A stretch of DNA of 30,193 nucleotides from Salpingoeca rosetta (taxonomy: Eukaryota > Protista > Choanoflagellata). The notes beneath the pieces were generated by a model that searched no databases, was not told the origin of the DNA, and saw nothing but the letters and a program-made list of their open reading frames with translations. Positions within the stretch are counted from its first letter, which is position 1, and each line of letters begins with the position of its first letter. Shown in pieces: positions 1 through 30,193 of this stretch. The translations under genes and the position numbers were made by a program. The stretch covers positions 1,500,950 through 1,531,142 of the forward strand of contig JAWQFM010000015.1 in the NCBI GenBank assembly GCA_033442325.1. Direction: 5' to 3'.

Positions 1-851
1 ACTACGACAGAGCCATCCACTTCCACGAGAAGGACCTCGCCATCACGGTGGAAGCGTTGGGCGAGAAGCACCCGAGCGTAGCCACGTCGTACTTCAACAT
101 CGGCCTGCTCTATGACAAGCGCGGTGACAAGGAGCAGGCCTGCGCGTACATGCAGCAGGCGCTCGACATTTTCACAAGCACGCTCAGGCCAGACCACCCA
201 CACACCCTCAAGGCGGAGCGCAACCTGCGGCGCATTCGCGGTGGTGCTGTGACTAGGCAGCACACATCCACGCAACACGTGTCAGAGTCTCGACTTCAGC
301 AGCAACACGTGCTTGCTCATCGCAACCTTCTTCTTCGGTTCATCTCTTCTGCTGTCGTGTACCAGGCGTTTGCTCCACAACGCAACCTGCTCATGCGATT
401 TCCCGGTGCAGTTGCACATGCTGACGTTGACGCAAGACGCCCAGCAAACACAGGCAGCGACGGTGAGGACAAGAAGACAGGGACTGGGCGAGATGCTCCT
501 CGTGGCTGCTCAGCACCAGCAAGAGCGTTGTACAAGGACGCTTGCGAGTGCCCGAGTGAGCCTCCGGCCGGTTGGTTGCGGAAGCGTGGGCGACGGAGGG
601 CCGCCTTTCGCCCGTGCTGGTGCAGGCTTGACGACGACGGCCACCTCGCGTACGGCAAGTCCGCGTCAGGCACGGCCAAGCGACGCATCCCCCTGTCCAG
701 CGTGCTGTCAGCTGAGCTCGCCCATGGTGGCGAGGAGTTACACGTTGCTGTTTCTGGCCGCACCTTCGTCTTCCGCCTGGACGCGCGCTCTGACACCTCG
801 CTCGCTGACTGGTGCACCGCCATCAACAGCCGCATCAACGTTACCACTTGA
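1..851 (+). CDS. TPR-repeat protein (kinesin-light-chain-like TPR_12 repeats), 5'-truncated, with C-terminal PH domain
   Basis: Frame from nt 3 reads YDRAIHFHEKDLAITVEALGEKHPSVATSYFNIGLLYDKRGDKEQACAYMQQALDIFTSTLRPDHPHT, the 42-aa 'LGxxHPxVAxSYxNIG' TPR type. Nt ~561-848 read AGWLRKRG...FRPCWCRL...LAYGK...IPLSSV...GRTFVFRL...DWCTAIN, a PH consensus including the terminal Trp helix. Part of 241-411 may be an intron. Confidence 0.85.
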   Translation, partial: YDRAIHFHEKDLAITVEALGEKHPSVATSYFNIGLLYDKRGDKEQACAYMQQALDIFTSTLRPDHPHTLKAERNLRRIRGGAVTRQHTSTQHVSESRLQQQHVLAHRNLLLRFISSAVVYQAFAPQRNLLMRFPGAVAHADVDARRPANTGSDGEDKKTGTGRDAPRGCSAPARALYKDACECPSEPPAGWLRKRGRRRAAFRPCWCRLDDDGHLAYGKSASGTAKRRIPLSSVLSAELAHGGEELHVAVSGRTFVFRLDARSDTSLADWCTAINSRINVTT

Positions 852-1084
852 CTGTGTGCTCTGTGCGTGTGTGTGTGTGTGTGTGCTTGCTGGTTGGTCT
901 CTTTGCTCGTTTGCTCCTGCTCTTTCCTCCACGTGCTTGCCTTACTTTGCTTGCGTTTACTTGCTTGACGTTGCTTGTTTGATACTTTAGTAAACTCTTC
1001 ACACAATCCAACCGGCTGACAAGCAACGAGCATACAACCTACCACACCACATGTCAACCAAACACTGGCTACCAAACAGGTCCT

Positions 1085-1790
1085 ATTTCACCCCCACATC
1101 CACGCCCACAACGCCCGCCTTGCGCATCAGCAGCTCCAGGGCGCGGCCGGTGGAAAAGTAGTTCCATCAGCACGGGAACGTGCGGCGGTATCGACAGCGG
1201 GTTCAGTTGCCCAGCGTGCACGGCGCCCAGCAGCCTTGTCGGAGCGCTGGATCGCCAGCCTGGACTCGTTGTCCGTCCGCGACCGTGCGGAACAGCACGT
1301 CGTCGCTGCAGGCCCACGCCAGTCGGGGATGCGCCCAACTCTCGTGTTGCACCTCTGCCGCCGTCTCCGTCCTCCGGGTTCAGGTTGTCCGTCCCCAGCG
1401 ACAGGTTCCACCATACAAAGGGCTGCAGCGACATCAGGAACAAGAAGACGTCCGCGTCCCGGCAGCGTGCTCCCGCAGTCTTGTCTCCTCGTCGGTCTGG
1501 CTGCGCATCATGCCGGAAAACTCGGCGGCAATCCCCGCCAGCAGCTGCAGCTTCGTCTCGAACGGCGCCTGCAGCGTCTTCTCGCTGACGACCATGTGCG
1601 TGTCCTTGTCCACCTCGCGCGCGCGCGTGTACTCAGGCGAGAAGTTAGAGCACGTCTCCCGCGTGTGGGGCACACCCGTCCGTCCGCGCAAACCACAATC
1701 GTGTTGACGGTGTTGTCGTGCTGGAACGTGCGCTTGGGGGTCTCGGCGGCCAACACACGGGTACGTCGGGGTCGGCGAGCGACCTGAAGC
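1085..1790 (-). pseudogene. Degraded coding remnant of unidentified gene
   Basis: GC-rich, microsatellite-free sequence in which protein-like segments switch frames (RVLAAETPKRTFQHDNTVNTIVVCADG / NFSPEYTRAREVDKDTHMVVSEKTLQAPFETKLQLLAGIAAEFSGMM / FLFLMSLQPFVWWNLSLGTDNLNPE / ALELLMRKAGVVGVDVGVK*). No family recognised. Confidence 0.4.
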
Positions 1791-2189
1791 CAAGCGGCCG
1801 TGGCGGCGGCGGCTCGATGGTGAGCCCACCATCCCCGTTCACGCATCCCGACAGACGTGCTTGCTCTTGGTAGCTGCTGGAGCTGGCGGTGGGGGGAGGA
1901 AACGACGCCACGACAGACGGACAAATGACTGGGCGTGGATGTGGAGACGTTGTGGCAACGGAGCATGCTGGCTGAACGCACTTGTCGACATAGATGAGCT
2001 GCAATGTTTGCAAAAGCGAGGAGAGATGGTTGCCTGTTGGACAGGCGAGGAGACGGGTGAGTGGTGGATGAGGAGGAGCACGACTAGTCCACACGGGACC
2101 TCAGGTGAACCGCAAACAAAGGTGCAGACAAGGGCGCAAACGCACGCACGCATGAACGCACGCACCGTCGATGGAGATGCCTGCGTCGT

Positions 2190-2416
2190 TGGCAAGAGCG
2201 AGCCAGGTGTGGGTGATGGTGGTGGCGGCGATGGTGCCGATGCGTTTCAGCTCATCATTCGATTGAGACAGCTGCCGTACACCCAGTGCAATGCAGAAGG
2301 GATTGTGGTAGTGTTGGTGGTGGTAGTGAAACGGGTGAGAGACACTCTTCATGGAAGGACATGATGTTGTCCAACACGCCTTCCCCAACGCACAAGTTCA
2401 TGCACACACACACTCA

Positions 2417-2471
<55 letters not shown>

Positions 2472-2785
2472 TCACACACCATCCTCCTTCTCGTGGTCAA
2501 TGAGGCCTGCGGCGGGGATGCGCTGGCGGTCAAACGTGAGCGTGGTCAGGACACGGAAGAGCTGCCAGATGTGGATGAAGTGCAGGTTGCTCAGGCAGTC
2601 CAGGATGCCGTTCAGCATTAGCACGCGAACGGGTGCAGCAGCTTCGGGTGGTCTGTGGCCAGCGACAGTAGCAGCACAGACATGGCTGCGTCCACCTCCT
2701 GTGCCTGCCCCGTGCCAATGTGCGCCACCAGCGCCCCGACCACCTCCTGCCGTGCACTCGCGGTCAGAGTCGAGCGTAGGCGCCT
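2190..2785 (-). pseudogene. FANCD2: FANCD2 internal fragment, frameshifted
   Basis: [28 protein letters not shown]...[frameshift ~2618]MLNGILDCLSNLHFIHIWQLFRVLTTLTF, then QLSQSNDELKRIGTIAA at ~2274-2225. This matches my recollection of human FANCD2 ([28 protein letters not shown]...VKGILDYLDN...IRKLFYVLSTLAF...RKQLSSTVFKYKLIGIIGA). Confidence 0.75.
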
Positions 2786-2789
2786 GGCT

Positions 2790-4350
2790 TCTGGAAGGTG
2801 CAAAACTTGCACCTGCTCACGGTCGAGCGTGGAAATGTACCCCCAGGCAGCGTAAGACGACACGGGCACGCACGTGTCCTGGACGCACTTGCGGCAGAGG
2901 CGGTCGTGCTGGCGCGTGGGCTCGCAAAGCAAATCTCTTCCTCATCCGGACCGCACTGCGTGACGGGGCAGCATGACTCGGCCTGGCGGTCGACGGGCTT
3001 GAAGGTGGCGCTAAGCTCGCACTGGCTGCACACGCAGGTCGCTGGTAGGGGGTGGGCTTGGCCGTCTCCTCCTCGCCGGCGTCGCACGTGGTGATGGGAA
3101 AGCGAGCACGCCCTGGCCAGAGACAGCCTTGTACGTGCCCTCCAGGACACTCGTCGCAGACACGGTCGCTGATGAGGAGGGTCATGGCCTGCACCTCCTC
3201 AAACCCGGGCGCGCACTCTGTGACATCGTGGAACGGGGTGGGTGGCAGGGTCGCTGTCGTGGTCGTGGGTGCCTGCGCGGCAGGTGAAGCTGGAGCAGGA
3301 GCCGTGGGAGCCCGCCTCCGTGTAGTGGCCAGCGGGGCACACTTGGCTGGCAACCCGTGGAACCGTCGCTGTCCAAGTCGATGGTGCGGGCCGAGCAGTC
3401 GTGGCACACGCGGTCCGAGGAGCGGGTTGGCGCGGCGACCTCTTCCTGGCCGAGCTCGCACTCCTCAATGGGCTCGTACTTGCTGCCGCCAACGGATGGG
3501 GAGAACTCCGTCACGCCGTCGCATGGCCGACAGTCGGCTGAGTCGGCGTCGTAGACAAGGATGAAGCCAGCGCTGCACTCGCACGTGTCTGTGCAGCCTG
3601 GGCAGGAGCGGCGTGCCGCGTAGGCGTCCATCTGGCGAATGGTGGCGTGGATGCCATCCTCGCCCGGGCCGGAGCAGCACACGTCAAGCACCACGTCGAG
3701 CTGCTCGTCCGTGGGCCAGGCGCACACCATCTCCTCAAACAGTTGCGTGATGAGCTTGTTGCAGGCGAGCGTGTCACAGGAGCACATGCGGTCCGTGGTG
3801 AGCGTGGGCGGGATGGTCTCGATGAAGGGCTCCTCGCACATGCTGGTGGGAAGCACGAAGTGTGGTCCGGCAGCGGCTGGTACTCTATGCCAAAGGGTGC
3901 AGCTCACGCACATGCGGTGGTCGCGCACGGCGTTGCCAGAGACAGACTTCTTCTGGCCCGGCTTGCACTCCGTCCAGGGAGAGCAGACGGCGTCGGAGGA
4001 CGCGGAGCATGGGGGTGGAGGCCCAGGTGCCCATGCCACACGTGGTACATGGCACACAGCCGTGGTCCTTGGCGTAGTAGTTGAGAGGGCAATGGGGTAA
4101 TGCACGACTGAGGAGGTTGCCGTCGCAGCGGAGGCAGTTGGTGGCGTTTGGTGGGGTGGCATTCGGCACACGCAGAGTGTCATTCAGCACACCCGTTGCC
4201 GAGCTCATACTCACCATCGGGATACTCGCTGATGCAGGGGCCGTTACTGGAGGTGAGAGTGTAAAGGTGGTGCACTCCTCGATGCCTGGAGGGGAGGGTG
4301 TGAGAGTGGAGGAGAGGATGGCATGAGAGGCAATGACAACATCGTTGTGA
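2790..4350 (-). pseudogene. Cys-rich surface-protein ectodomain fragment (furin-like repeats followed by TNFR-like 'PTxxSDRVC' repeats), multiply frameshifted
   Basis: Furin-like segment GPCISEYPDGEYELGNGCAE*HSACAEC (in-frame TGA at 4180-4182 where Cys is expected) and NATNCLRCDG...CPLNYYAKDHGCVPCTTC. Repeats PPTLTTDRMC, APTRSSDRVC, LISDRVCDECPGG, EPTRQHDRLC and CPAGHYTEAGSHGSC are spread over all three frames. Confidence 0.75.
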
Positions 4351-4453
4351 GTATTGAGGAACCGTGGACTGCTTCATCTTCTCAAGGTCACAGCACTCAT
4401 ATGAGGCTTTGAGGACAAGCACGCACACACACACACAGACACACACACACACA

Positions 4454-4492
<39 letters not shown>

Positions 4493-4523
4493 ACACACAC
4501 ACAGCCAACATTGGTCGACATAC

Positions 4524-6806
4524 CATTGGCTCGTGATGAAGCTATCCTTGAGGACCCGCCGCACGGTGTTGTTGTGCACCGTGTCGATTGTCGTGCGGTT
4601 GTGCTTTACAGTCTGCTCCAAGTTACCGTTTGTGGTGAAGCATGTTTCCCAGAGTTCCATATCCGCGCCGCCGTTCAGCGTTTTCGCGACAGCTCGACGG
4701 GAGTCACGGGCGTACTTGTTGGCACTGACCATGTTTGCAAATCGCACCGCAGTCTGTTCCAATCGTCACCGTGTCACGCTTCCACTGCCCGCGCACGACG
4801 TCGTTGAGCAGTATGCTGTTCGCACACGAGGGCACGCCGTTGATGCTGGCGTACGAGCACATGGCAGCGAGTGCCCGCGCTTGTACTGCACATGAGACAC
4901 GTGGCAGAGGGGAGCGGGATTAAGATGAGAGGAAGTGGGAGGTGAGACAATGGCGCAAGCATGGTGGCGTGGACGAACTAACAAGAATTGTTGATTGGAG
5001 ATACACGAGCTGACACAGACAGACAGACAGACAGACACACACACAGACACACACACATGCACACCTCGGTGTCCCAGAGGTCAAAGGTGGAGATGTTCCC
5101 GTTGAATGCCATGCGGTTTGTCTCGACTGAGTGCGCGTCAACGTGCCTGAGACCTAAACGCGATGGTGCGGTGACAGCAGTGTAAATGCCACGTCCACCA
5201 CCAAGTGTGCAAATGAGGCAGCGTCGCTGACACGGTTGTGGGCGTTTGCATACACACATGTGTGAGGTTGGATGCGTGTGCGTACCTGCTGCCATTTTCT
5301 TGTACTTCTTGTCTGGGCCATCCTGGCAGCCCGCCACGTAAGCAGCAGCGTACTCGCCGCTCAAGAAGGGGTCTCAGAGATTGAGAGGGGTGCAGTGAAG
5401 GTGAGGAGGTGGGCCTGCAAAGTGAGCGAGTGAGTGAGTGGGTGTGAAGGGGTAGGTGGCATGCGGGCGACTGTTGTAGAGTGATCGCATGTGTGTGTGT
5501 GTGTGTGTGTGTGTGATATGCACCAGCATCAGCAACACGTGATGAAGGGGGCACCTGTGAGTCCGATCTTCTGCAAGACGCCACCGCCCCTGTGCCAGTT
5601 GAGATTGTTGAAGGTGCGCATCTCCGTGGATATGGCCTGGAAGCGAAGAACCGGTGGTGGGGGACGAGGAGGGAGGGAATGAGCGACAGGTGCTTTGATC
5701 AAGAAGAAACCGACATAGCAGACGCAGACACACACACACACACGCACACACACACAAACACACACACACACACACACACACACTCGCCACAAGCAGCGGT
5801 TGAAGGCTGCGCCAAGACCTGTGGGCCTCAATGAACGTCGTGGCACACTTGTCCTGGCTAATGATGCACGCAGAGCCAACGGCCGTGTTCATCTCCGCCA
5901 GATGCAGACACGGCGGGATGTCGAGCCTGCGACCCACACGCACACACACACACACACACACGCATATGAGCATGAAGAAGGAGGTGGTGTTGTTGTGTGA
6001 GTGGTGGTGGTGGTTGATGTCGCTGTGGCACGAAGAAGCGGGGAGGATGGGGAAACACAAGCAGACAGAGTCACGAGTCACTGCGTGGGCGCTGCATGTC
6101 CTTTCCCACCTCTTGACGCCATAGTCAACAACAGCGCATGGGCTGGTGACGGGATCAGGGCCAATGAGACCGGCCTTCTCCTGAAGACTGAGGCGTCCAA
6201 TGAGGTCGTCGAGGCGGGCACAGATGGACAGACTCGAGTTGCAGACCGGCAACTCCTTCGTCGCTGCAGACAGGCACACATGGCCTGACAAGGCAAGGTG
6301 CAACATCAGTCACGTATCTACGTATGAGCTGAGAGAGAGAGAGTGTGTGTGTGTTGTGTGGGTGTGTGTGTTGGAATCACCTGTTGGGAACGGGTTTGCC
6401 GGAACAGTTTGCCCGGATGATGTTCATGCGATTGGCTGCTCCGCACCTCTCGGTGGACGCTCCCGTGCACGGCTCGTTGCAGTCGGAGGAAGGCTACGCA
6501 TGTGTGCGTGTGTGTGTGTGGGGGGGGGGGGGGGGGAGTGCGTGGTCGCATACACTACTGCACACACACAGACACACACACAGGCCCCCCCCCCGACACC
6601 CACCCCGACACACACACACACACACACACACACCGCCGAAACTGCGCGGGGGAATTCAGCTTGGGTGCCGCAAAAACATTGGTAGCCGTACTCCACGGCG
6701 CTTGAGGGGAAAAGTTTAAGGGGTAGCAGAGCGTGGCACACGCCTCACGCGTCATGGACGCCTGCGCCATGTTACCCGCACACGCAAATGTGCGATTGTC
6801 AACGCG
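4524..6806 (-). pseudogene. WSC domain + glycoside hydrolase family 3 (beta-xylosidase-like) N-terminal domain; spliced and disrupted
   Basis: WSC segments MTREACATLC..AVEYGYQCFCG (6640-6800) and CNEPCTGASTERCGAANRMNII (6380-6495). GH3 exons: CNSSLSICARLDDLIGRLSLQEK (6110-6290), TGLGAAFN (5790-5925), AISTEMRTFNN (5555-5637), DPFLSGEYAAAYVAGCQ (5286-5373), VETNRMAFNGNISTFDLWDT (5065-5150), MCSYASINGVPSCAN...QW...TDCGAI (nucleophile Asp motif), then a +1 frameshift at ~4740 into ANMV...LNGGADMEL. No C-terminal GH3 domain; no DPRWGR exon found. Confidence 0.85.
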
Positions 6807-6919
6807 GTGTGTGCCAGTGTGTGTGTGGGGGGGGGGAAAAAGTGTTAATAGGTGAGCGCCCCGATGGGAACAGGGGATGGGCCACGCCAAGTTCGGTTTC
6901 TCACACACACACACACACA

Positions 6920-7019
6920 NNNNNNNNNNNNNNNNNNNNNNNNNNNNNNNNNNNNNNNNNNNNNNNNNNNNNNNNNNNNNNNNNNNNNNNNNNNNNNNNN
7001 NNNNNNNNNNNNNNNNNNN
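6920..7019. other. Assembly gap (100 N)
   Basis: N run. Confidence 1.
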
Positions 7020-8051
7020 TTGTGCTGAGTCAGCACTTTCTTCTTTGTTGTTGAAAAGGGGTACACTGTTGTGTGATGGAAGGCAGACGCACAGACACGC
7101 ACAGACACGCACAAGCATGCACATGCACGCACACGCAGGGGCGAACGGCTTGATGGAGCAGTGCTCTGCGTGGAGGAACGAAAGGGAAGGGGGGTACCAA
7201 CTGCTGTGCTGCTTGCGACCGGGACAAAAGCACGACAAGTGCACGGCAAGCCAGCCAGCAAGCAGGCAGTGAACAGCCACAAACAGGTCTCCTTCTTGGC
7301 CCGTTTGCATACACATGTGTGACACGCGCCACAAACACTGTCAGCCCACCGTCTGGCAACAGCATCCAAGATGCACTCGGCAAGGGCACTGGCAACTTGC
7401 GATTGGTGATTGTGGCGTCGTCGCCAGCAACGGCCTCAGCTACAGCATCCCTCCCTTTGATGCAACTCCCACCACCTCTGTGCTCATCATCAGCCCATCA
7501 TCAACAACAGCAGCAGCAGTGACAGCAGCAGTGACAGCAACAGTGGATGACACGACCACCATCAACAGTCTGCAAGCCATGTGGGCACTGCAGGCGGCGT
7601 GTGCTGTGGCTCACAGCACCCTCCTCTACGGATGTGACCACTGATCGCAGGACGAACACAGCAGACACAAGCACGCTTGGTGGGCTGCTACACGGCGGAT
7701 GCAAGTGGATCAGCGGCGTGGCTGCGGACAATAGCCTTTTCCTGTCACGGCATTCCATGCAACTCGCCATCCATCCTCATCGTCGATTCAGCCGCAAATG
7801 CGGTGGCCACAACCATGCTGTCCGTTCCAGATGTGGTATGGTGGTGTGTGTTGGCTGGCAACGACCTGCTGTGTCGCATGCCCTGGCTCGTCCATCACCT
7901 GCTCCTCGTCAATCCACGATGCTGACACAGGTTGGTGTGTGATTGTGTGTTGGAACAAAAGTGCATATGGGGTTGGCACGCACCATGTGCGACTGCTGAT
8001 GCTTACACGCTTCACCAATCCTGTCTATTCCATCTCATCACACCACTTCAG

Positions 8052-8799
8052 TGAATTCCACCACCGTGACGGCCTCGATGTGTCCATGCCACTCTTCTCC
8101 ATGGTGACATTCATTCATTCACACCGGAGCGACGCTTTCCGCCCGCACACAGAAAGTACCTCGTCACCTTCAGGTATGTGCATGCATGCGTGCGTGTTGT
8201 GACGTGGTGCGATGTGAGGTTCGATGTTCACTGCTGCTGCTGCGAGTTTTGAGGGGTTGGTGTCGCTCACTGCACCACCGCTCGCGCTTCTTGTGTCGCT
8301 GCAATCTCACTCCAAACCTGTCATGGTGCCACTGCTTGACGTGTGTCTTCTTTCCCTGTTGTGCAGACGCACTACCAAGTCTGCTCATTCTCATGCCATG
8401 CTCAACCACCTCCCCAAGCTTCACAACGACAGGTGTGGTGTGCTGCGCTGTGATGTGTTGTGTGTTATCGTGTTCCGTGTGTGTCTCGTGCGTTGCCTCG
8501 GATTCAACTGGCGTTGGTGCTATGTGTGTATCTGTCTGGAACCACCTCACACATACACACACACACACACATCGTCTCTTTGTACGTTTGCTTGTGTATG
8601 CGCAGGGACATTGTGTTGGTGTGCGCCTGCCGGTGGTTTGGCGAAGAGCGCATGGGCCGAGAGGGGAAGGTTGGATATGACCCGTCGTGCAAGCAGGCAG
8701 AGGAAGAGTTCAACAAGTACACGTACACAGAGCTGGCGCTGGAGACCAAGTTTGGGCTCATCGTGGAAGGATTTGGCTACCACTCCTTCAGGTGTGTGT

Positions 8800-8884
<85 letters not shown>

Positions 8885-9029
8885 GCAGACGATTTCGGTC
8901 CTGTTTGTGCTCTCACCCACCTTCCATCTCCTGTCACCCCCTTTCATGCCTCATAGATCATGGCTGCGGGTACCATCCCCGTCATTGTCGTCGATCACTA
9001 CGTGCTGGTGCGTATGGATGAATGACACT

Positions 9030-9122
<93 letters not shown>

Positions 9123-9236
9123 GGGAGATGTACCCCTCCCGTCGTTCATGGTGCTGTGACGTGATGTTCTGGTGTTTGCTTTTTACATGCTTGCAGCCCT
9201 ACCAGGACCTGCTGGACTGGGAGACGTTCATCATCC
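8052..9236 (+). pseudogene. Exostosin-family (GT47, EXT1/EXT2-like) glycosyltransferase fragment, probably disrupted; runs into gap
   Basis: Exons 8052-8173 (DGLDVSMPLF, frameshift, RKYLVTFR), 8367-8432 (NHLPKLHNDR), 8606-8791 (DIVLVCAC...YTYTELALETKFGLIVEGFGYHSFR), 8957-9007 (IMAAGTIPVIVVDHYVL) and 9197-9236 (PYQDLLDWETF), matching the EXT motif 'F.L...G....SFR..E...AGCVPV......LPF...I.W'. There is a phase mismatch between 8791 and 8957. Confidence 0.75.
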
Positions 9237-25412: not shown

Positions 25413-28400
25413 ATGGCCCTGCCCTCGTCGATCCTCTCGCTCTCGCCAAAGAAGACAAGAGCAGCACGAGCTGCTGTTGCCTGTGCATGGCTGCACCTGT
25501 TGCTCTTGGCGTTGGTGCCGGTGCTGACATGTGGTGTGCGGGCGCAAGGAAGCGTCACCCCCAAGGTTGACACAGCAATACCGACGCCACCAAGGCACCC
25601 TTTTGCTGAGACTAATGTACTGTGCTTGCCGGAGTCCCTGAATCCGGATTCGATCGCATCATCTGCTGCGTCAATCTTGCACGTTGGCTGTTCTGCGCAC
25701 AGCACGCTGTGCCGCGAGGCCAAGGCTGAGCTGCGGCAACTGCTGCAACTCGTTCACGGTGCACCCCACGTTCACAACACGACTGACGTCGACGACAAGA
25801 GCGACAACAGGACGGGCGACGGGGCGTCTGACCCACCCCAACCGCAAGCAACTGCCACCGCGCTGCAACGTGCACTCACCTTCTTCTGTGACAGCGGCAG
25901 TGGAGGAGTTGACTCAGATGAGCTTCATCCTGTCAAGGAACAGCAAGCGCACCAAGCAACGCCACTTGCTGCAGACGTGCCAACGCCAAGAACGCCAAGC
26001 AACGGTGACTTCTTCGGTGAATCCGCAGCAGATCCTCCGCTGTCACGACCACCACCTGGCGTCCAGAAACACCAGCGATCAGCTGCTCCGCGTGGACAGT
26101 CGCGGTCCAGGACCCGCCGGAACGAGATCAACTTCGATGCAGCGCACGCCGTGTGCACGTTGTCCAGTCTGCTTTTCCTCAACTGCACCTCGCCTCCCAC
26201 TGCTGTTCCCACGAGTACGTTGGAAGTGATTGTGGATGCTGATGAAGAGCTGGGCGCCCTCACCACGCAGCCTGACCCCGACTTCAACACCACCATCGCC
26301 GCAGAATACGTGCGGCAACAGACGGCAGCCTGGGAGCCACAGCGCCTTTTTGTCAGTGGGGCGGTGTACTTGGAGGATTTGGTGTGGCTGCTCAACAGCG
26401 GCACGTGGGACATCATGGCCAACCTCAGGCTTACAGGGCTTCACAGGCCCACACTGTGTCTCAACATCTTCAACCCTTTGGCACGCGTTCGCGACATTCG
26501 CATCTCGGACGGCCATGTCATTCGTCTCGCGCAACGCTGCAGCGACGATGAGCCAACATTCCAACCACTTCTTAAACAGCTTCGGGTGCACCGAATGGGC
26601 ATCCGTGAGATTGAAGACGGCACATTCCGCGATCTGGGTGCCTTGAACACAGTCGACTTGCAAGGCAACCAGCTGACCACGCTCACGGCTAGCACTCTGC
26701 TTGGGCTGAGGCACGTGGATACCCTCACGCTGCGCGACAACCACATCGGTGTCATTGAGGACGGTGCGTTTGCTGGTATGACCCAGCTGAGAATCCTGAA
26801 CTTGATTGAGAATGATCTGACCAAACTGGCGGAGCAAACATTCTCGCCGCTGAGCACGCTGCATTCGTTGCACCTGGGCAGCAACCCAATCGACACCTTG
26901 CCGCCACGTGTGTTTTCATCCCAGACGCGGCTAAAGATTCTTGCGATGAACAACTGCAACCTTCAACGCCTGCCGCCCGCCTTGTTCCAGAACACAACGG
27001 TGCTGAGAGAGGTGCGCTTCGACAACAATCAGCTCAGTCAGGTTCCAAACAGCCTCTTCCATCCGCTGCGGCAGCTGGCGAGATTGGAGCTGAACCACAA
27101 CCGCCTGGCGCGCGTTGACGCCCTTTGGGCGGGAACACTTGAGACGCTGCTGCGGCTTCAGCTGGACAGCAATGCTCTTACGGTCATTGACCCGTCACTC
27201 GTGCCATCTGCACCGAGGTTGACCATTTTAAGCCTCCACCACAACGCGTTGGATTCATCCGTCCTGCTCTCGCTGCGCGACCATGCGCAGCTGACCAGTG
27301 TCGTTGTGAGCTTCAACCGCATCACCACTATACCTGCAGGCGCGTTGCGCAACATGACGCGGCTGGTGCACCTGTCGCTGACCGACAACTTCCTCACTGC
27401 GTTTCCGCCTCGAGAGCTGCCGTCCCTTCTGTCCCTTCACCTCAGGAACAATCCCCTCACAGCCCAGCCAGATGTGTCTGGGTATCCACAGCTTGACGAA
27501 GTGGCACTCACCAACCACCGCATTCCACATCTGGATGTGACGCCGCTCTTGCGGCTGACGCTGCTGCACAGGCTGGAGATTGCGGCGGCCAGCGACGTAC
27601 CCTTCGCTTCAGTTGCGTTGAGTGATTTGGGCAGTCTGCCGGGCTTGAAGCAGCTCGTCGCTGTGGACATGAGGAACATGGACGTGACGCCTTTGCTCGG
27701 CCTGGTGCAGACTGCTACTGCAGGCACACTTGCGTTTCGCGAGCTTTCCCTTGGCTGGAGTGGCATGGACGAAGTCTCCTTTCCCTTGGAGGACATTTGC
27801 GCCCTCCTTCACGACAATGTCATCCGCTTTGAGCTGTCCAACACGGCATTCACGCACGTGCGCCTGTGCGATGGCGTGGCCTACGACGCCGTCTTCCTCC
27901 AAGACAACCTGCAGCTGCAGAGCGTGAGCAGTGTCGGCGGTGTGCAGCAGCTCAACGTGTCCGGGTGTCCACATCTGCAGCAGCTGCAGGTGCCGTCAGC
28001 AGAGGTGCTGGACATCAGTGGCACACGGGTGCCGCTGTTCCGTGGACTGTGCACGTCGCTTGGAACACGCACGGTTGTTGCACGCAACTGGCAGACTGGG
28101 GACTTGACAAACACAGCACGCTTGCGGCAGCTGCTATCCCAGTGCTTGGCGTTTGGGGGTGTGGATGTGCTGGACCTGAGCGACAATGCGCAGCTCAATC
28201 GACCCAGCGTCGTGAACAGTGTGCTGTCGGAGGTCGTTGTGTTGGGAGCAGAAGGCCTACACTTGACTCACGACTTTGCATTTGTTCCTGGGCGACCGAG
28301 CATTGGGCTTCTGCAGTTGGCCGACAACCCCATCACGTGCCAGCTGCAGTTTGTCAATGTGCAAACACGCATTGCGCTCCAAATCCGCCATTTCCGGTCC

Positions 28401-29128
28401 CAAGAGCTGGGCTACTTCTACACGTGCCAGTGTGCGCAAGGGTACGAGCATCGCGGTGGCCACTGTCGTGTGATCGAGCGTGACAACACAGCAGCGGTGC
28501 TGGGCACGCTGGCGGGCTTGTTGGCGTTCCAGGGCATCCTGTTCGCCGCGTACCGCACATACACACGACAGCGACGCCTGCAGGCGGACAACGCGCTGAA
28601 GGAGCAGCTGCTGGTGGAGCGAGACGCGGAGGTGATGGCACTGAAGAAGGTGTGGGAGATCGAGTACGATGAGCTGAGGATGATCAAACGGGTTGCTGCG
28701 GGTGCGTTTGGCGTGGTATTCAAGGCACAATGGGACACGGTGACGGTGGCAGTGAAGGTGCTGCAGCAAGGGGTGATGATGTTTGACGAGAGCACGGTGG
28801 TTGAGTTTGAGAAGGAGGTGGAGTTCTTGCAGCGGACACGGCATCCACACGTGGTGCGGTTCTTTGGGGCGGGCACCGATCCCAACGGCAGCCCATTCCT
28901 TGTGCTGGAGTTTGTGGCGATGGGGTCGCTCAAGGACTTGTTGGGCAAGGACATGGCGCGGGTATTGCAGGAGGTTGCAGAGAGGAACAATGATGATGAT
29001 GCTGAAGGAGAAGAGAGGGAGGAGAAGGCAGAAGGGATGGCGGGGGTGTGGGAGCTGAAGCTGCGGCTGTTGCGCGATGTTGCGAGTGGGATGGCCTTTA
29101 TCCACAGTTTGGATCAAGTGCACAGGTA

Positions 29129-29162
<34 letters not shown>

Positions 29163-29837
29163 TGTGTATATATATATATATATGTGTGTGCGTGTGTGTG
29201 TGTAGTTGGGGGGGGGGAACGGTTGTGGCGGCGTTGTGGCGTTGGTCATTGTTGTGTAACTGCGGGTCGTCACCATCACTGAACACACACACACACATTC
29301 ACACACATTCGTAATCAACCCAAAGCTTGTGCACCGCGGAGGTGATGCACTGAAGGATGTGTGGGAGATCGAGTACGATGAGCTGAGGATGATCAAACGG
29401 GTTGCTGCGGGTGCGTTTGGCGTGGTATTCACGGCACAATGGGACACGGTGACGGTGGCAGTGAAGGTGCTGCAGCAAGGGGTGATGATGTTTGACGAGA
29501 GCACGGTGGTTGAGTTTGAGAAGGAGGTGGAGTTCTTGCAGCGGACACGGCATCCACACGTGGTGCGGTTCTTTGGGGCGGGCACCGATCCCAACGGCAG
29601 CCCATTCCTTGTGCTGGAGTTTGTGGCGATGGGGTCGCTCAAGGACTTGTTGGGCAAGGACATGGCGCGGGTATTGCAGGAGGTTGCAGAGAGGAACAAT
29701 GATGATGATGCTGAAGGAGAAGAGAGGGAGGAGAAGGCAGAAGGGATGGCGGGGGTGTGGGAGCTGAAGCTGCGGCTGTTGCGCGATGTTGCGAGTGGGA
29801 TGGCCTTTATCCACAGTTTGGATCAAGTGCACAGGTA

Positions 29838-29871
<34 letters not shown>

Positions 29872-30193
29872 TGTGTATATATATATATATATGTGTGTGC
29901 GTGTGTGTGTGTAGTTGGGGGGGGGAACGGGTTGTGGCGGCGTTGTGGCGTTGGTCATTGTTGTGTAACTGCGGGTCGTCACCATCACTGAACACACACA
30001 CACACATTCACACACATTCGTAAACACACACACACACACATTCGTAAACACACACACACACATTCACACACACATGCATGCACTGCAGGGATCTGAAGAG
30101 CGGCAATGTGCTGGTGTCATCGCGACTGCGTGCCAAGATCACGGATTTCGGATCCATTCGCCAGTGCCTCGCGGGTGGCACCGCAAACGTGCC
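25413..30193 (+). CDS. LRR receptor-like Ser/Thr (TKL) kinase, 3'-truncated by window end
   Basis: Exon 1 (25413-29125) encodes a hydrophobic signal (WLHLLLLALVPVLTCGVRA), many LxxLxLxxNxL repeats (~26570-27560, degenerate to ~28340), an EGF-like CQCAQGYEHRGGHC, a TM helix AAVLGTLAGLLAFQGILFAAY (28491-28553), WEIEYDEL, AAGAFGVV, VAVK and HPHVVRFFG. The exon starting at 30089 completes HR|DLKSGNVLV...KITDFG. Confidence 0.93.
28625..30023 (+). repeat. Near-identical tandem duplication of kinase N-lobe plus intron start (28625-29314 vs 29335-30023)
   Basis: Copies are offset by 709 nt and share even the (GT)n/(TA)n tracts. The few differences cluster at the start of copy 2, plus AAG>ACG (K>T) at ~29432. 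Confidence 0.95.

What the first reader, a model, noticed from the sequence alone, without database searches (positions are those of the whole stretch)
1085..6806. Co-oriented chain of unrelated, decayed gene fragments (GH3 > Cys-rich ectodomain > FANCD2 > unknown): possible gene-capture mosaic
Seen: four unrelated partial genes lie head-to-tail on the minus strand with almost no intergenic spacer and no assembly gap between them. All are truncated and frameshifted, and GH3 and FANCD2 retain introns. Known: Helitrons and Pack-MULEs capture intron-containing fragments, often co-oriented. Inference: this is DNA-level capture by a mobile element or a subtelomeric/segmental-duplication patchwork, i.e. 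domain shuffling caught in progress. I found no transposase and no convincing element termini.
Basis: partly seen in the sequence, partly recalled or inferred. Interest (0 to 1): 0.75.

Follow-up and report, generated by a model that had tools for sequence, protein, structure and literature searches.

The report
Subtelomeric patchwork of dead gene fragments
The chain of broken gene pieces is real, but it is one of about twenty diverged copies of a block that has been copied between chromosome ends of the choanoflagellate Salpingoeca rosetta: an ordinary subtelomeric duplication patchwork, not the cargo of a gene-capturing transposon.

Summary
On the minus strand of 6806-1953 lie a WSC exon remnant, the 5' half of a GH3 beta-xylosidase-like gene, a TNFR-type Cys-rich ectodomain piece and an internal FANCD2 piece that keeps two introns. 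No N gap separates them. All are truncated and frameshifted. The fourth, "unknown" piece (1952-852) shows no sign of coding.

Intact parents exist for two pieces: FANCD2 at C21:34.9-40.7 kb and a TNFR-repeat/TM/2xSH2 receptor at C23:867-872 kb. For GH3 only a 5'-deleted relative exists, at C5:21.7-25.3 kb.

The window is the last 30 kb of contig C15. The mosaic recurs about 20 times at 82-88% identity, almost always within 75 kb of contig ends, and always in the same orientation relative to the end. Junctions and several frameshifts are shared by diverged copies, so they are not assembly or consensus errors.

The GH3|Cys-rich junction lies inside an intronic (GT)n microsatellite. The Cys-rich|FANCD2 junction is an 8.4-kb deletion with 3-7 nt of microhomology.

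I found no transposase, reverse transcriptase, Helitron Rep or terminal inverted repeats in the blocks examined.

The scan reached the same conclusion earlier on another piece of this genome (s1-436029), and the genome paper already mentions shared subtelomeric repeats.

The parts
6640..6803 (-). WSC-domain exon remnant, split over two frames by a frameshift near 6710-6740
   Evidence: The homologous exon at C5 is continuous and matches PF01822 WSC at E 2.9e-8. It belongs to the block at window 6561-6919, which is shared with C5 at 82%.
4510..6306 (-). 5' half of a GH3 (beta-xylosidase-like) gene: exon-like pieces separated by (CA)n-rich spacers, ending at the exon that covers PF00933 profile 189-314; +1 frameshift near 4735
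   Evidence: PF00933 pieces. DNA homology of 4909-4527 to the C5 GH3 exon. The +1 at C5-exon nt 211 is shared by all 8 copies compared. The 5' exons are identified by eye only. Exon 1 is present in about 18 subtelomeric copies only.
4420..4503 (.). (CA/GT)42 microsatellite that is itself the junction between the GH3 piece and the Cys-rich piece
   Evidence: TRF. GH3 homology stops just 5' of it, and homology to the parent's intron starts just 3' of it.
4290..4419 (-). Remnant of the 3' part of the parent receptor gene's intron, with its AG acceptor kept
   Evidence: Comparison of window 4420-4200 with L032 4990-4770.
2750..4289 (-). Fragment of a TNFR-type Cys-rich ectodomain, equal to residues about 47/62-595 of the 1565-aa exon of the C23 receptor gene; 17 frameshifting indels
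   Evidence: 84% DNA identity over 1626 columns to L032 3214-4816. The parent has TNFR_c6 x6, a TM segment and SH2 x2.
2750..2756 (.). Junction of the Cys-rich and FANCD2 pieces, with 3-7 nt of microhomology; it marks an 8.4-kb deletion relative to the long form of the block
   Evidence: Three-way comparison with both parents. The long form in C3 carries 8,358 bp between the same two points.
1953..2756 (-). Internal FANCD2 fragment: part of an exon (Pfam profile 470-~556), an intron with (GT)n, an exon, an intron, and part of the next exon; a 2-bp insertion near 2625 gives a stop
   Evidence: Pfam PF14631 pieces. The parent is at C21:35320-36154. The 3' break is mid-exon.
852..1952 (.).
   Evidence: No Pfam match on either strand. 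It occurs only as about 21 block copies at 79-88% identity.
1..851 (+). End of a TPR_12 + PH-domain reading frame on the opposite strand, proximal part of block A
   Evidence: Pfam TPR_12 E 2e-11 and PH E 4.6e-7. It is repeated with block A.
6920..7019 (.). 100-N assembly gap that bounds block B distally

Best explanation
Window 1-6919 is the centromere-proximal part of a roughly 19-kb repeated domain at the right end of Salpingoeca rosetta contig C15. It is made of non-functional pieces of unrelated genes.

Shown:
- Each identifiable piece is a DNA-level copy, with introns kept, of part of a gene. The FANCD2 piece comes from a gene on C21. The Cys-rich piece comes from a TNFR-repeat/TM/2xSH2 receptor gene on C23. 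The GH3 piece is related to a subtelomeric GH3 gene whose only 3' half is on C5.
- The mosaic exists in about 20 copies at 82-88% identity, nearly all close to contig ends, and all in the same orientation relative to the end.
- The junctions and several disabling indels are shared between copies. The pieces were therefore joined and inactivated before the block spread.
- The GH3|Cys-rich join lies inside a (GT)n microsatellite of the kind that starts the introns of both source genes.
- The Cys-rich|FANCD2 join in this window is a secondary 8.4-kb deletion with 3-7 nt of microhomology. It is shared with the copies on C33 and on both ends of C20.
- After spreading, the copies drifted almost neutrally.

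Inferred:
- The pieces were patched in by repair of chromosome-end breaks, through end joining or template switching at microsatellites and microhomology.
- The block was then passed between chromosome ends by ectopic recombination or break-induced replication. This preserves telomere polarity.
- The block has no coding function of its own.
For: Location and identity:
- The window is C15:1500950-1531142 of a 1,531,142-base contig.
- The genome paper lists the 3' end of supercontig 15 as telomeric, with about 5 kb missing and 'matches others: yes'. The match between that supercontig and C15 is by size only.

Copies and polarity:
- One search gives 285 matches. Long ones lie at 11 contig left ends (all on the - strand) and at 6 right ends of known length (all on the + strand; lengths).
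- Block D (window about 9.4-18.6 kb; one search covers 10194-18604) has at least 16 copies with the same polarity.
- TTAGGG arrays lie at contig ends. On C5 the array is about 10 kb distal to the nearest retrieved block-D sequence, which begins at C5:14001, the edge of the stretch fetched. The order there is D-C-B.

Parents:
- FANCD2 is multi-exon on C21:34874-40734, while 17 other places hold only profile ~470-556. The alignment includes the introns.
- The C23 parent is a 1565-aa open exon.
- On the tree, the FANCD2 parent sits on a long branch (0.13) and the 11 copies form a star.

Decay:
- There are 3-17 frameshifting indels per Cys-rich copy. A 22-bp deletion is present in 8 of the 9 copies compared; the ninth, C20L, does not cover that site.
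- A +1 in GH3 is present in 8 of 8 copies.
- Diversity among copies is nearly flat over codon positions (0.092/0.073/0.113). Parent versus copy majority gives 0.038/0.022/0.078.

Junctions; long form.

No mobile-element signs.

More dead pieces lie in the long form, an E1 SCCH fragment and a WD40 fragment.
Against: - dN/dS among copies is 0.3-0.7, not 1. Part of this may be composition bias at GC-rich third positions, but a period of selection or gene conversion from functional paralogues is not excluded.
- A few copies are not near contig ends: C3 at 1.84 of 2.80 Mb, C10 at 190 kb, and a partial one at C29:461 kb.
- No fully intact GH3 parent exists in the assembly. The C5 gene lacks the first ~190 residues.
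- The window's own telomere is not assembled, and 11 kb of apparently different sequence lies distal to block D beyond N gaps.
- The repair and exchange mechanisms are inferred from junction anatomy only. Transcription was not examined.
Confidence: 0.88

Rival explanations
1. The mosaic is the cargo of a gene-capturing DNA transposon (a non-autonomous Helitron or a Pack-MULE-like element) that picked up host gene fragments and multiplied by transposition.
For: The fragments are co-oriented, intron-containing, internal gene pieces in many copies. The genome does hold three Helitron_like_N loci.
Against: - Every end-proximal copy has the same polarity towards the contig end, and nearly all copies are within 75 kb of an end.
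- Blocks A and B occur together, 8-16 kb apart, or alone, so no constant element ends can be defined.
- The only inverted repeats are microsatellites.
- No TE domain was found in the ORFs of 1-9 kb of the window or in the long form, and no TE-like ORF is seen at 7-30 kb.
- The Helitron Rep loci are interior and unlinked.
Confidence: 0.04
2. The blocks belong to a giant telomere-attached retroelement of the Terminon / Penelope-like type that carries co-oriented host-derived ORFs and attaches to chromosome ends in one orientation.
For: Fixed orientation towards the telomere and co-oriented host-derived pieces would fit. One RT hit lies 2 kb beyond a TTAGGG array on C17.
Against: - Only 25 RVT_1 hits exist in the genome, and none lies in or next to any copy of blocks A-D.
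- The pieces keep their introns.
- No long ORF in block D resembles anything.
Confidence: 0.02
3. The chain is an assembly artefact: a chimeric scaffold or collapsed repeats, with frameshifts caused by 454 homopolymer errors.
For: The assembly is Sanger plus 454. Microsatellites sit at several breakpoints, and N gaps flank the region.
Against: - Each junction is present in several separately assembled copies that differ by 12-18%. GH3|Cys-rich is in at least 8 copies. Cys-rich|FANCD2 is in C15, C33, C20L and C20R. The FANCD2 3' break is in 10 of the 11 copies compared; C20L's alignment stops about 60 nt short of it.
- Many frameshifting indels are shared between copies, and several are 22-50 bp long.
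Confidence: 0.02
4. The GH3-Cys-rich join is, or recently was, a functional chimeric subtelomeric gene family created by intron-to-intron recombination, and the copies are partly under selection.
For: The join is intron to intron. Both source introns are phase 0, the donor side comes from GH3, and the acceptor is retained. dN/dS among copies is below 1.
Against: - All 8 GH3 copies share a +1 frameshift.
- Eight of the nine Cys-rich copies carry a 22-bp deletion (the ninth does not cover the site), and all nine carry further frameshifts.
- The window's donor site is mutated.
- Diversity is nearly equal at the three codon positions.
- The GH3 TIM-barrel domain is cut before the C-terminal domain.
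Confidence: 0.04

Closest known systems
Human-type subtelomeric duplication patchworks (blocks exchanged between chromosome ends, joined by end-joining-type repair, carrying gene fragments and pseudogenes; from my own knowledge of the literature, e.g. Mefford & Trask 2002 and Linardopoulou et al. 2005, not read here)
   Same: - Multi-copy blocks on many chromosome ends.
- Conserved centromere-to-telomere polarity.
- Different block combinations at different ends.
- Junctions with microhomology or simple repeats.
- Truncated, intron-containing gene pieces.
   Different: - A different organism (a choanoflagellate) and a much smaller scale (blocks of 1-9 kb).
- Copies are more diverged (82-88%).
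- Intronic (GT)n microsatellites serve as a junction site.
Shared subtelomeric repeated regions of S. rosetta noted in the genome paper (Fairclough et al. 2013, PMC4054682, Methods and Table S3)
   Same: The same genome and the same phenomenon: regions repeated at most telomeric supercontigs, used there to recognise telomeric ends. The 3' end of supercontig 15 is listed.
   Different: In the passages read here, the paper does not describe the content of the repeats. The gene-fragment composition, the parents and the junctions are worked out in this report.
Helitron / Pack-MULE gene capture
   Same: Chains of co-oriented, intron-containing fragments of unrelated host genes, copied at the DNA level and multiplied.
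   Different: No element termini, no TIR, no linked Rep/Hel or transposase. The placement is strictly end-proximal and polar, not dispersed as insertions would be.

Membership tests
Subtelomeric segmental-duplication patchwork | The same sequence is present on many different chromosomes close to their ends | tested here: met
   About 17 copies of block B and about 21 of block A. Long matches lie at 11 contig left ends (<55 kb) and at 6 right ends of known length (4-76 kb from the end). Three interior exceptions exist.
Subtelomeric segmental-duplication patchwork | Orientation is conserved relative to the telomere | tested here: met
   All left-end copies are on the - strand and all right-end copies on the + strand, for blocks A, B, C and D.
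Subtelomeric segmental-duplication patchwork | Mosaic of blocks in differing combinations, with discrete breakpoints | tested here: met
   There is a breakpoint at window 2751-2754. A and B are adjacent in C15, C33 and C20, and 8-16 kb apart in C3, C36, C30 and C2. Other deletions are seen in C5, C33 and C29.
Subtelomeric segmental-duplication patchwork | Physical adjacency to telomere repeats | tested here: inconclusive
   TTAGGG arrays are assembled at only a few ends. On C5 the array (4.2-4.5 kb) lies distal to blocks D-C-B. The window's own telomere is not assembled. Table S3 of PMC4054682 lists the 3' end of supercontig 15 as telomeric by fosmid mates, but the equivalence of that supercontig to C15 rests on size only.
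Helitron gene capture | Defined ends (5'-TC, 3' hairpin + CTRR) shared by the copies | not tested
   No constant copy boundaries could be defined, because the blocks break at different points. A termini search was therefore not meaningful.
Helitron gene capture | Rep/helicase gene in the element family, with dispersed insertion sites | tested here: not met
   The Helitron_like_N loci (C26:81 kb, C20:809 kb, C1:1.21 Mb) are unlinked to any block copy. The copies are polar and end-proximal.
Pack-MULE / TIR transposon capture | Terminal inverted repeats flanking the captured fragments | tested here: not met
   The only inverted repeats in window 1-9230 are (CA)n against (GT)n microsatellites.
Processed pseudogene (retrocopy) | Loss of introns | tested here: not met
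   The FANCD2 fragment aligns through two parental introns. The Cys-rich fragment keeps the 3' part of the parental intron.
Telomeric retroelement (Terminon / Penelope-like) | Reverse transcriptase gene within or next to the repeated unit | tested here: not met
   There are 25 RVT_1 matches in the genome, none in or beside blocks A-D.
GH3 glycoside hydrolase (functional member) | Complete N-terminal barrel plus C-terminal domain in one open frame set | tested here: not met
   The window copy stops at profile ~314 of PF00933, lacks PF01915 and carries a shared +1 frameshift.
FANCD2 (functional member) | Full-length protein of about 1400 positions | tested here: not met
   Only profile 470-~556, plus the two following partial exons, is present, with a stop. 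The full gene is on C21.

The most novel reading that the evidence does not exclude
The (GT)n microsatellites that commonly begin S. rosetta introns may act as recombination substrates at chromosome ends. They would fuse exons of unrelated genes intron-to-intron and in phase, as in the GH3 N-domain joined to a TNFR-repeat ectodomain here. Under this reading, subtelomeres of the closest unicellular relatives of animals would work as a nursery for exon shuffling of receptor genes, and this dead mosaic would be one failed product.
Probability: 0.08. Interest if true: 0.55.

Novelty: new member of a known kind. Interest (0 to 1): 0.2.

Why it matters
**For annotation.** These roughly 20 blocks should be masked or labelled as pseudogene mosaics. 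Otherwise the FANCD2-like, GH3-like and TNFR-like hits at chromosome ends inflate gene-family counts for a species that is used to reconstruct the gene content of animal ancestors.

**For biology.** The mosaic documents that choanoflagellate chromosome ends exchange sequence and collect gene debris, as animal and fungal subtelomeres do. It also gives one clean example of an intron-to-intron join at a microsatellite. Nothing here calls for a new mechanism.

Tried and rejected
- **Ordinary intron-rich genes misread as broken.** Rejected: each piece is far too short for its family, and the parents elsewhere are complete.
- **Helitron, MULE and retroelement readings.** Rejected.
- **Parent for the 'unknown' segment 852-1952.** I found only block copies, including an interior partial copy at C29:461 kb that already carries the FANCD2 junction, so it is not a parent.
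- **Statistical support for the 5' GH3 exons.** Pfam and PDB sequence searches of single exons gave nothing significant. A search of the genome with exon 1 found only subtelomeric copies.
- **Joined (spliced) GH3 model.** Exons were searched singly, by reference.
- **dN/dS.** On its own it was ambiguous (0.3-0.7), so I added diversity per codon position.
- **Sequence limits.** The 10 kb upstream of the window came back as N (withheld), so the proximal limit of block A on C15 is not known.
- The coordinates were obtained instead by printing translations by reference.
- **Large protein-database searches.** Not used. The parents were found inside the genome, and the remaining open piece shows no sign of coding.
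Full report
**What the window is**

The sequence is eukaryotic, 45-66% G+C, and full of (CA)n/(GT)n microsatellites. It is C15:1500950-1531142, the last 30 kb of a 1,531,142-base contig in a 55.4-Mb, 68-contig assembly.

Earlier notes of this scan name the genome as Salpingoeca rosetta. This fits the 55-Mb genome with TTAGGG telomeres described by Fairclough et al. 2013 (PMC4054682). Their Table S3 lists the 3' end of supercontig 15 (1,520 kb) as telomeric, with about 5 kb missing and matching other ends. I equate that supercontig with C15 by size only. Nothing suggests human DNA.

**Check of the observation**

N runs lie at 6920-7019 and further on. None lies inside 1085-6806. The pieces, on the minus strand, are as follows.

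- **GH3.** Pfam finds Glyco_hydro_3 profile 203-262 (window 4892-4728) and 255-314 (4732-4550) in two different frames.
- **FANCD2.** Pfam finds FancD2 profile 470-507 (2758-2642) and 513-547 (2624-2520), also in two frames. These scores are weak, but DNA homology settles the identity.
  - Window 2756-1953 aligns over 866 columns (754 bits) with C21:35320-36154, inside a FANCD2 gene. That gene's exons match profile 316-1377 in order, without stops.
  - The alignment runs through part of an exon, an intron with (GT)n, a whole exon, a second intron and part of a third exon. The introns are therefore retained.
  - The split of the two Pfam hits is a 2-bp insertion that creates a stop, not an intron.
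- **Cys-rich piece.** Window 4245-2750 is 84% identical to C23:870214-871816. This lies in a 1565-aa uninterrupted exon encoding six or more TNFR_c6 repeats (E 1.5e-57), a transmembrane segment and two SH2 domains (E 3.6e-25). The fragment equals parent residues about 62-595.
- **GH3 relative on C5.** Window 4909-4527 matches the GH3 exon at C5:21.7-22.1 kb. That exon is GH3 by Pfam (E 4.4e-10) and beta-xylosidase-like by PDB sequence search (5a7m, E 6.6e-14).
- **More 5' GH3 exons (6306-5062).** These show the expected short motifs in the right order, by eye only. Single-exon searches were not significant.
- **WSC exon remnant.** It lies upstream at about 6803-6640.
- **'Unknown' piece (1952-852).** It has no family match on either strand and no parent. 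I see no evidence that it is a gene.

**The mosaic is a multi-copy chromosome-end block**

- A search of the genome with window 1-9200 gave 285 matches at 82-88% identity.
- The FancD2 profile search found the full gene on C21, plus 17 further places that hold only profile ~470-556.
- Long matches lie within 55 kb of the first base of 11 contigs, all on the minus strand. They also lie 4-76 kb from the last base of six contigs whose lengths I know (C33, C30, C36, C20, C2, C29), all on the plus strand.
- Window 10194-18604 (block D) behaves the same way in at least 16 copies.
- On C5 a TTAGGG array at 4.2-4.5 kb lies distal to blocks D, C and B in that order. Block D was retrieved only from C5:14001 inward.
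- Exceptions in location are C3 at 1.84 Mb, C10 at 190 kb and a partial copy at C29:461 kb.
- The blocks break at fixed points. Many copies cover window 1-2754 (block A), and others cover 2751-6919 (block B).

**Long form and junctions**

In C3, C36, C30 and C2, blocks A and B are 8-16 kb apart. In C3 the Cys-rich homology continues to about parent residue 1070. The FANCD2 homology continues back to C21:34183. The spacer holds further dead pieces, a ubiquitin-E1 SCCH fragment (E 7.9e-6) and a weak WD40 match.

The window's direct Cys-rich|FANCD2 junction is therefore a secondary deletion of 8,358 bp relative to C3. At the join the two parents share TGC(A/G)CGG, that is 3-7 nt of microhomology. 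The same junction is present in C33, C20-left and C20-right.

The GH3|Cys-rich junction lies inside the (GT)42 tract at 4420-4503:
- On one side the GH3 exon ends, with its donor region mutated.
- On the other side, window 4419-4290 matches the 3' part of the parent receptor's intron, up to its retained AG acceptor.
- Both source introns begin with (GT)n. The receptor's intron is phase 0, and the GH3 intron is phase 0 if the donor I infer on C5 is right. The phase match has a one-in-three chance expectation.

The FANCD2 3' break at about 1953 is mid-exon. It is shared by 10 of the 11 copies compared; C20L's alignment stops about 60 nt short of it.

**The pieces are dead, and the damage is real**

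- Against the C23 parent, the nine copies compared carry 3-17 frameshifting indels each.
- Several of these indels are shared: a 22-bp deletion in 8 of 9 copies (C20L does not cover the site), a +1, a 47-50-bp deletion and a 29-bp deletion.
- All eight GH3 copies share a +1, and all end their homology to C5 at the same base.
- Indels shared by separately assembled copies that differ by 12-18% cannot be consensus errors, and the shared junctions cannot be chimeric joins.
- dN/dS among copies is 0.3-0.7, lower than neutral expectation.
- Diversity among copies is nearly flat over codon positions (0.092, 0.073, 0.113). Parent versus copy majority shows the codon pattern of a selected gene (0.038, 0.022, 0.078).
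- On a tree of the FANCD2 piece, the parent sits on a long branch and the 11 copies form a shallow star. This fits a single capture followed by spread.

**Parents**

- FANCD2 has an apparently intact parent on C21.
- The receptor has an apparently intact parent on C23.
- GH3 does not. The 3' half, with the GH3_C and following domains, exists only at C5:22.1-25.3 kb. That gene lacks the exons for the first ~190 residues, between two microsatellites. I cannot tell a true deletion from an assembly collapse.

**Mobile elements**

- No transposase, RT or Rep domain was found in the window or in the long form.
- The only inverted repeats are microsatellites.
- The genome's 25 RVT_1 matches and three Helitron_like_N loci lie elsewhere.
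- Together with the strict polarity and the end-proximal location, this rejects transposon capture.

**Explanation**

Gene pieces were patched into a chromosome end at the DNA level, at microsatellites and microhomologies. They were inactivated early, and the block was then copied among chromosome ends without inversion. The patchwork, the parents, the junction anatomy, the polarity and the decay are shown. The repair pathway and the mode of inter-chromosomal transfer are inferred.

**Comparison and novelty**

This is the pattern known from human and other subtelomeres (my own knowledge, not read here). The genome paper already notes repeated subtelomeric regions at most S. rosetta telomeres. 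This scan reached the same verdict for a similar 10-kb mosaic on another piece of the genome (s1-436029). The specific content and junctions are new detail, so I class it as a new member of a known kind, of low interest.

**Limits**

- The 10 kb upstream of the window was withheld.
- No reads or RNA-seq were available.

Noticed in passing
window 9414-18604: Block D is about 9 kb of non-coding-looking, low-complexity sequence without convincing ORFs. At least 16 copies at 83-87% identity lie at contig ends, all in the same polarity. On C5 it lies between the TTAGGG array and block C.
   Followed up: partly
window 1-851 (+) and L021:187-1092: A TPR_12 plus PH-domain reading frame lies on the opposite strand at the proximal edge of block A. 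In other copies it is preceded by a tandem array with a 126-bp (42-aa TPR) period. Whether any copy is a working gene was not examined.
   Followed up: partly
L021:6505-7068 (+) and L021:7194-8552 (+) (C3:1841505-1843552): The 8.4-kb spacer of the long form carries further gene debris: a ubiquitin-activating-enzyme SCCH-domain fragment (E 7.9e-6) and a weak WD40 match.
   Followed up: partly
L015:7241-10000 and L016:1-1300 (C5:21241-25300, +): A WSC exon runs directly into a GH3 gene that starts at profile position ~189 and continues to the C-terminal end. This is the only copy of the GH3 3' half in the genome. The missing 5' exons fall between two (GT)n tracts, so either a deletion or an assembly collapse is possible.
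   Followed up: partly
L032:281-4978 (-) (C23:867281-871978): A receptor-like gene has a single 1565-aa exon with TNFR-type Cys-rich repeats, one transmembrane segment and two cytoplasmic SH2 domains. This architecture has no obvious animal counterpart that I know of.
   Followed up: partly
window 24081-24864 and 27740-29307: These stretches, distal to block D and separated by N gaps, are 99-100% and 90% identical to C15:968286-970804 on the opposite strand. The LRR-kinase end of the scaffold may be a misplaced or duplicated interior segment.
   Followed up: no
window 28421-30063: There is an apparent tandem duplication of about 709 bp inside the kinase-coding region. Identical microsatellites lie at 29129-29203 and 29838-29912, with near-identical flanking ORFs. 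It may be an assembly artefact at the contig end.
   Followed up: no
G000:C17:1387565-1388044 (+): A reverse-transcriptase match in an 1126-aa open frame lies about 2 kb beyond the TTAGGG array at C17:1385099-1385360.
   Followed up: no
G000:C17:49569-49829 (+): A weak match to the Cys-rich ORF lies within an open frame reported as more than 8,300 aa, about 50 kb from the left end of C17. A copy of GH3 'exon 1' lies 2 kb upstream (C17:47435-47611).
   Followed up: no
G000:C21:9888-10969 (-): A copy of the 'unknown' segment (window 852-1952) lies 24 kb distal to the real FANCD2 gene on the same chromosome end. No FancD2 hit was reported next to it.
   Followed up: no
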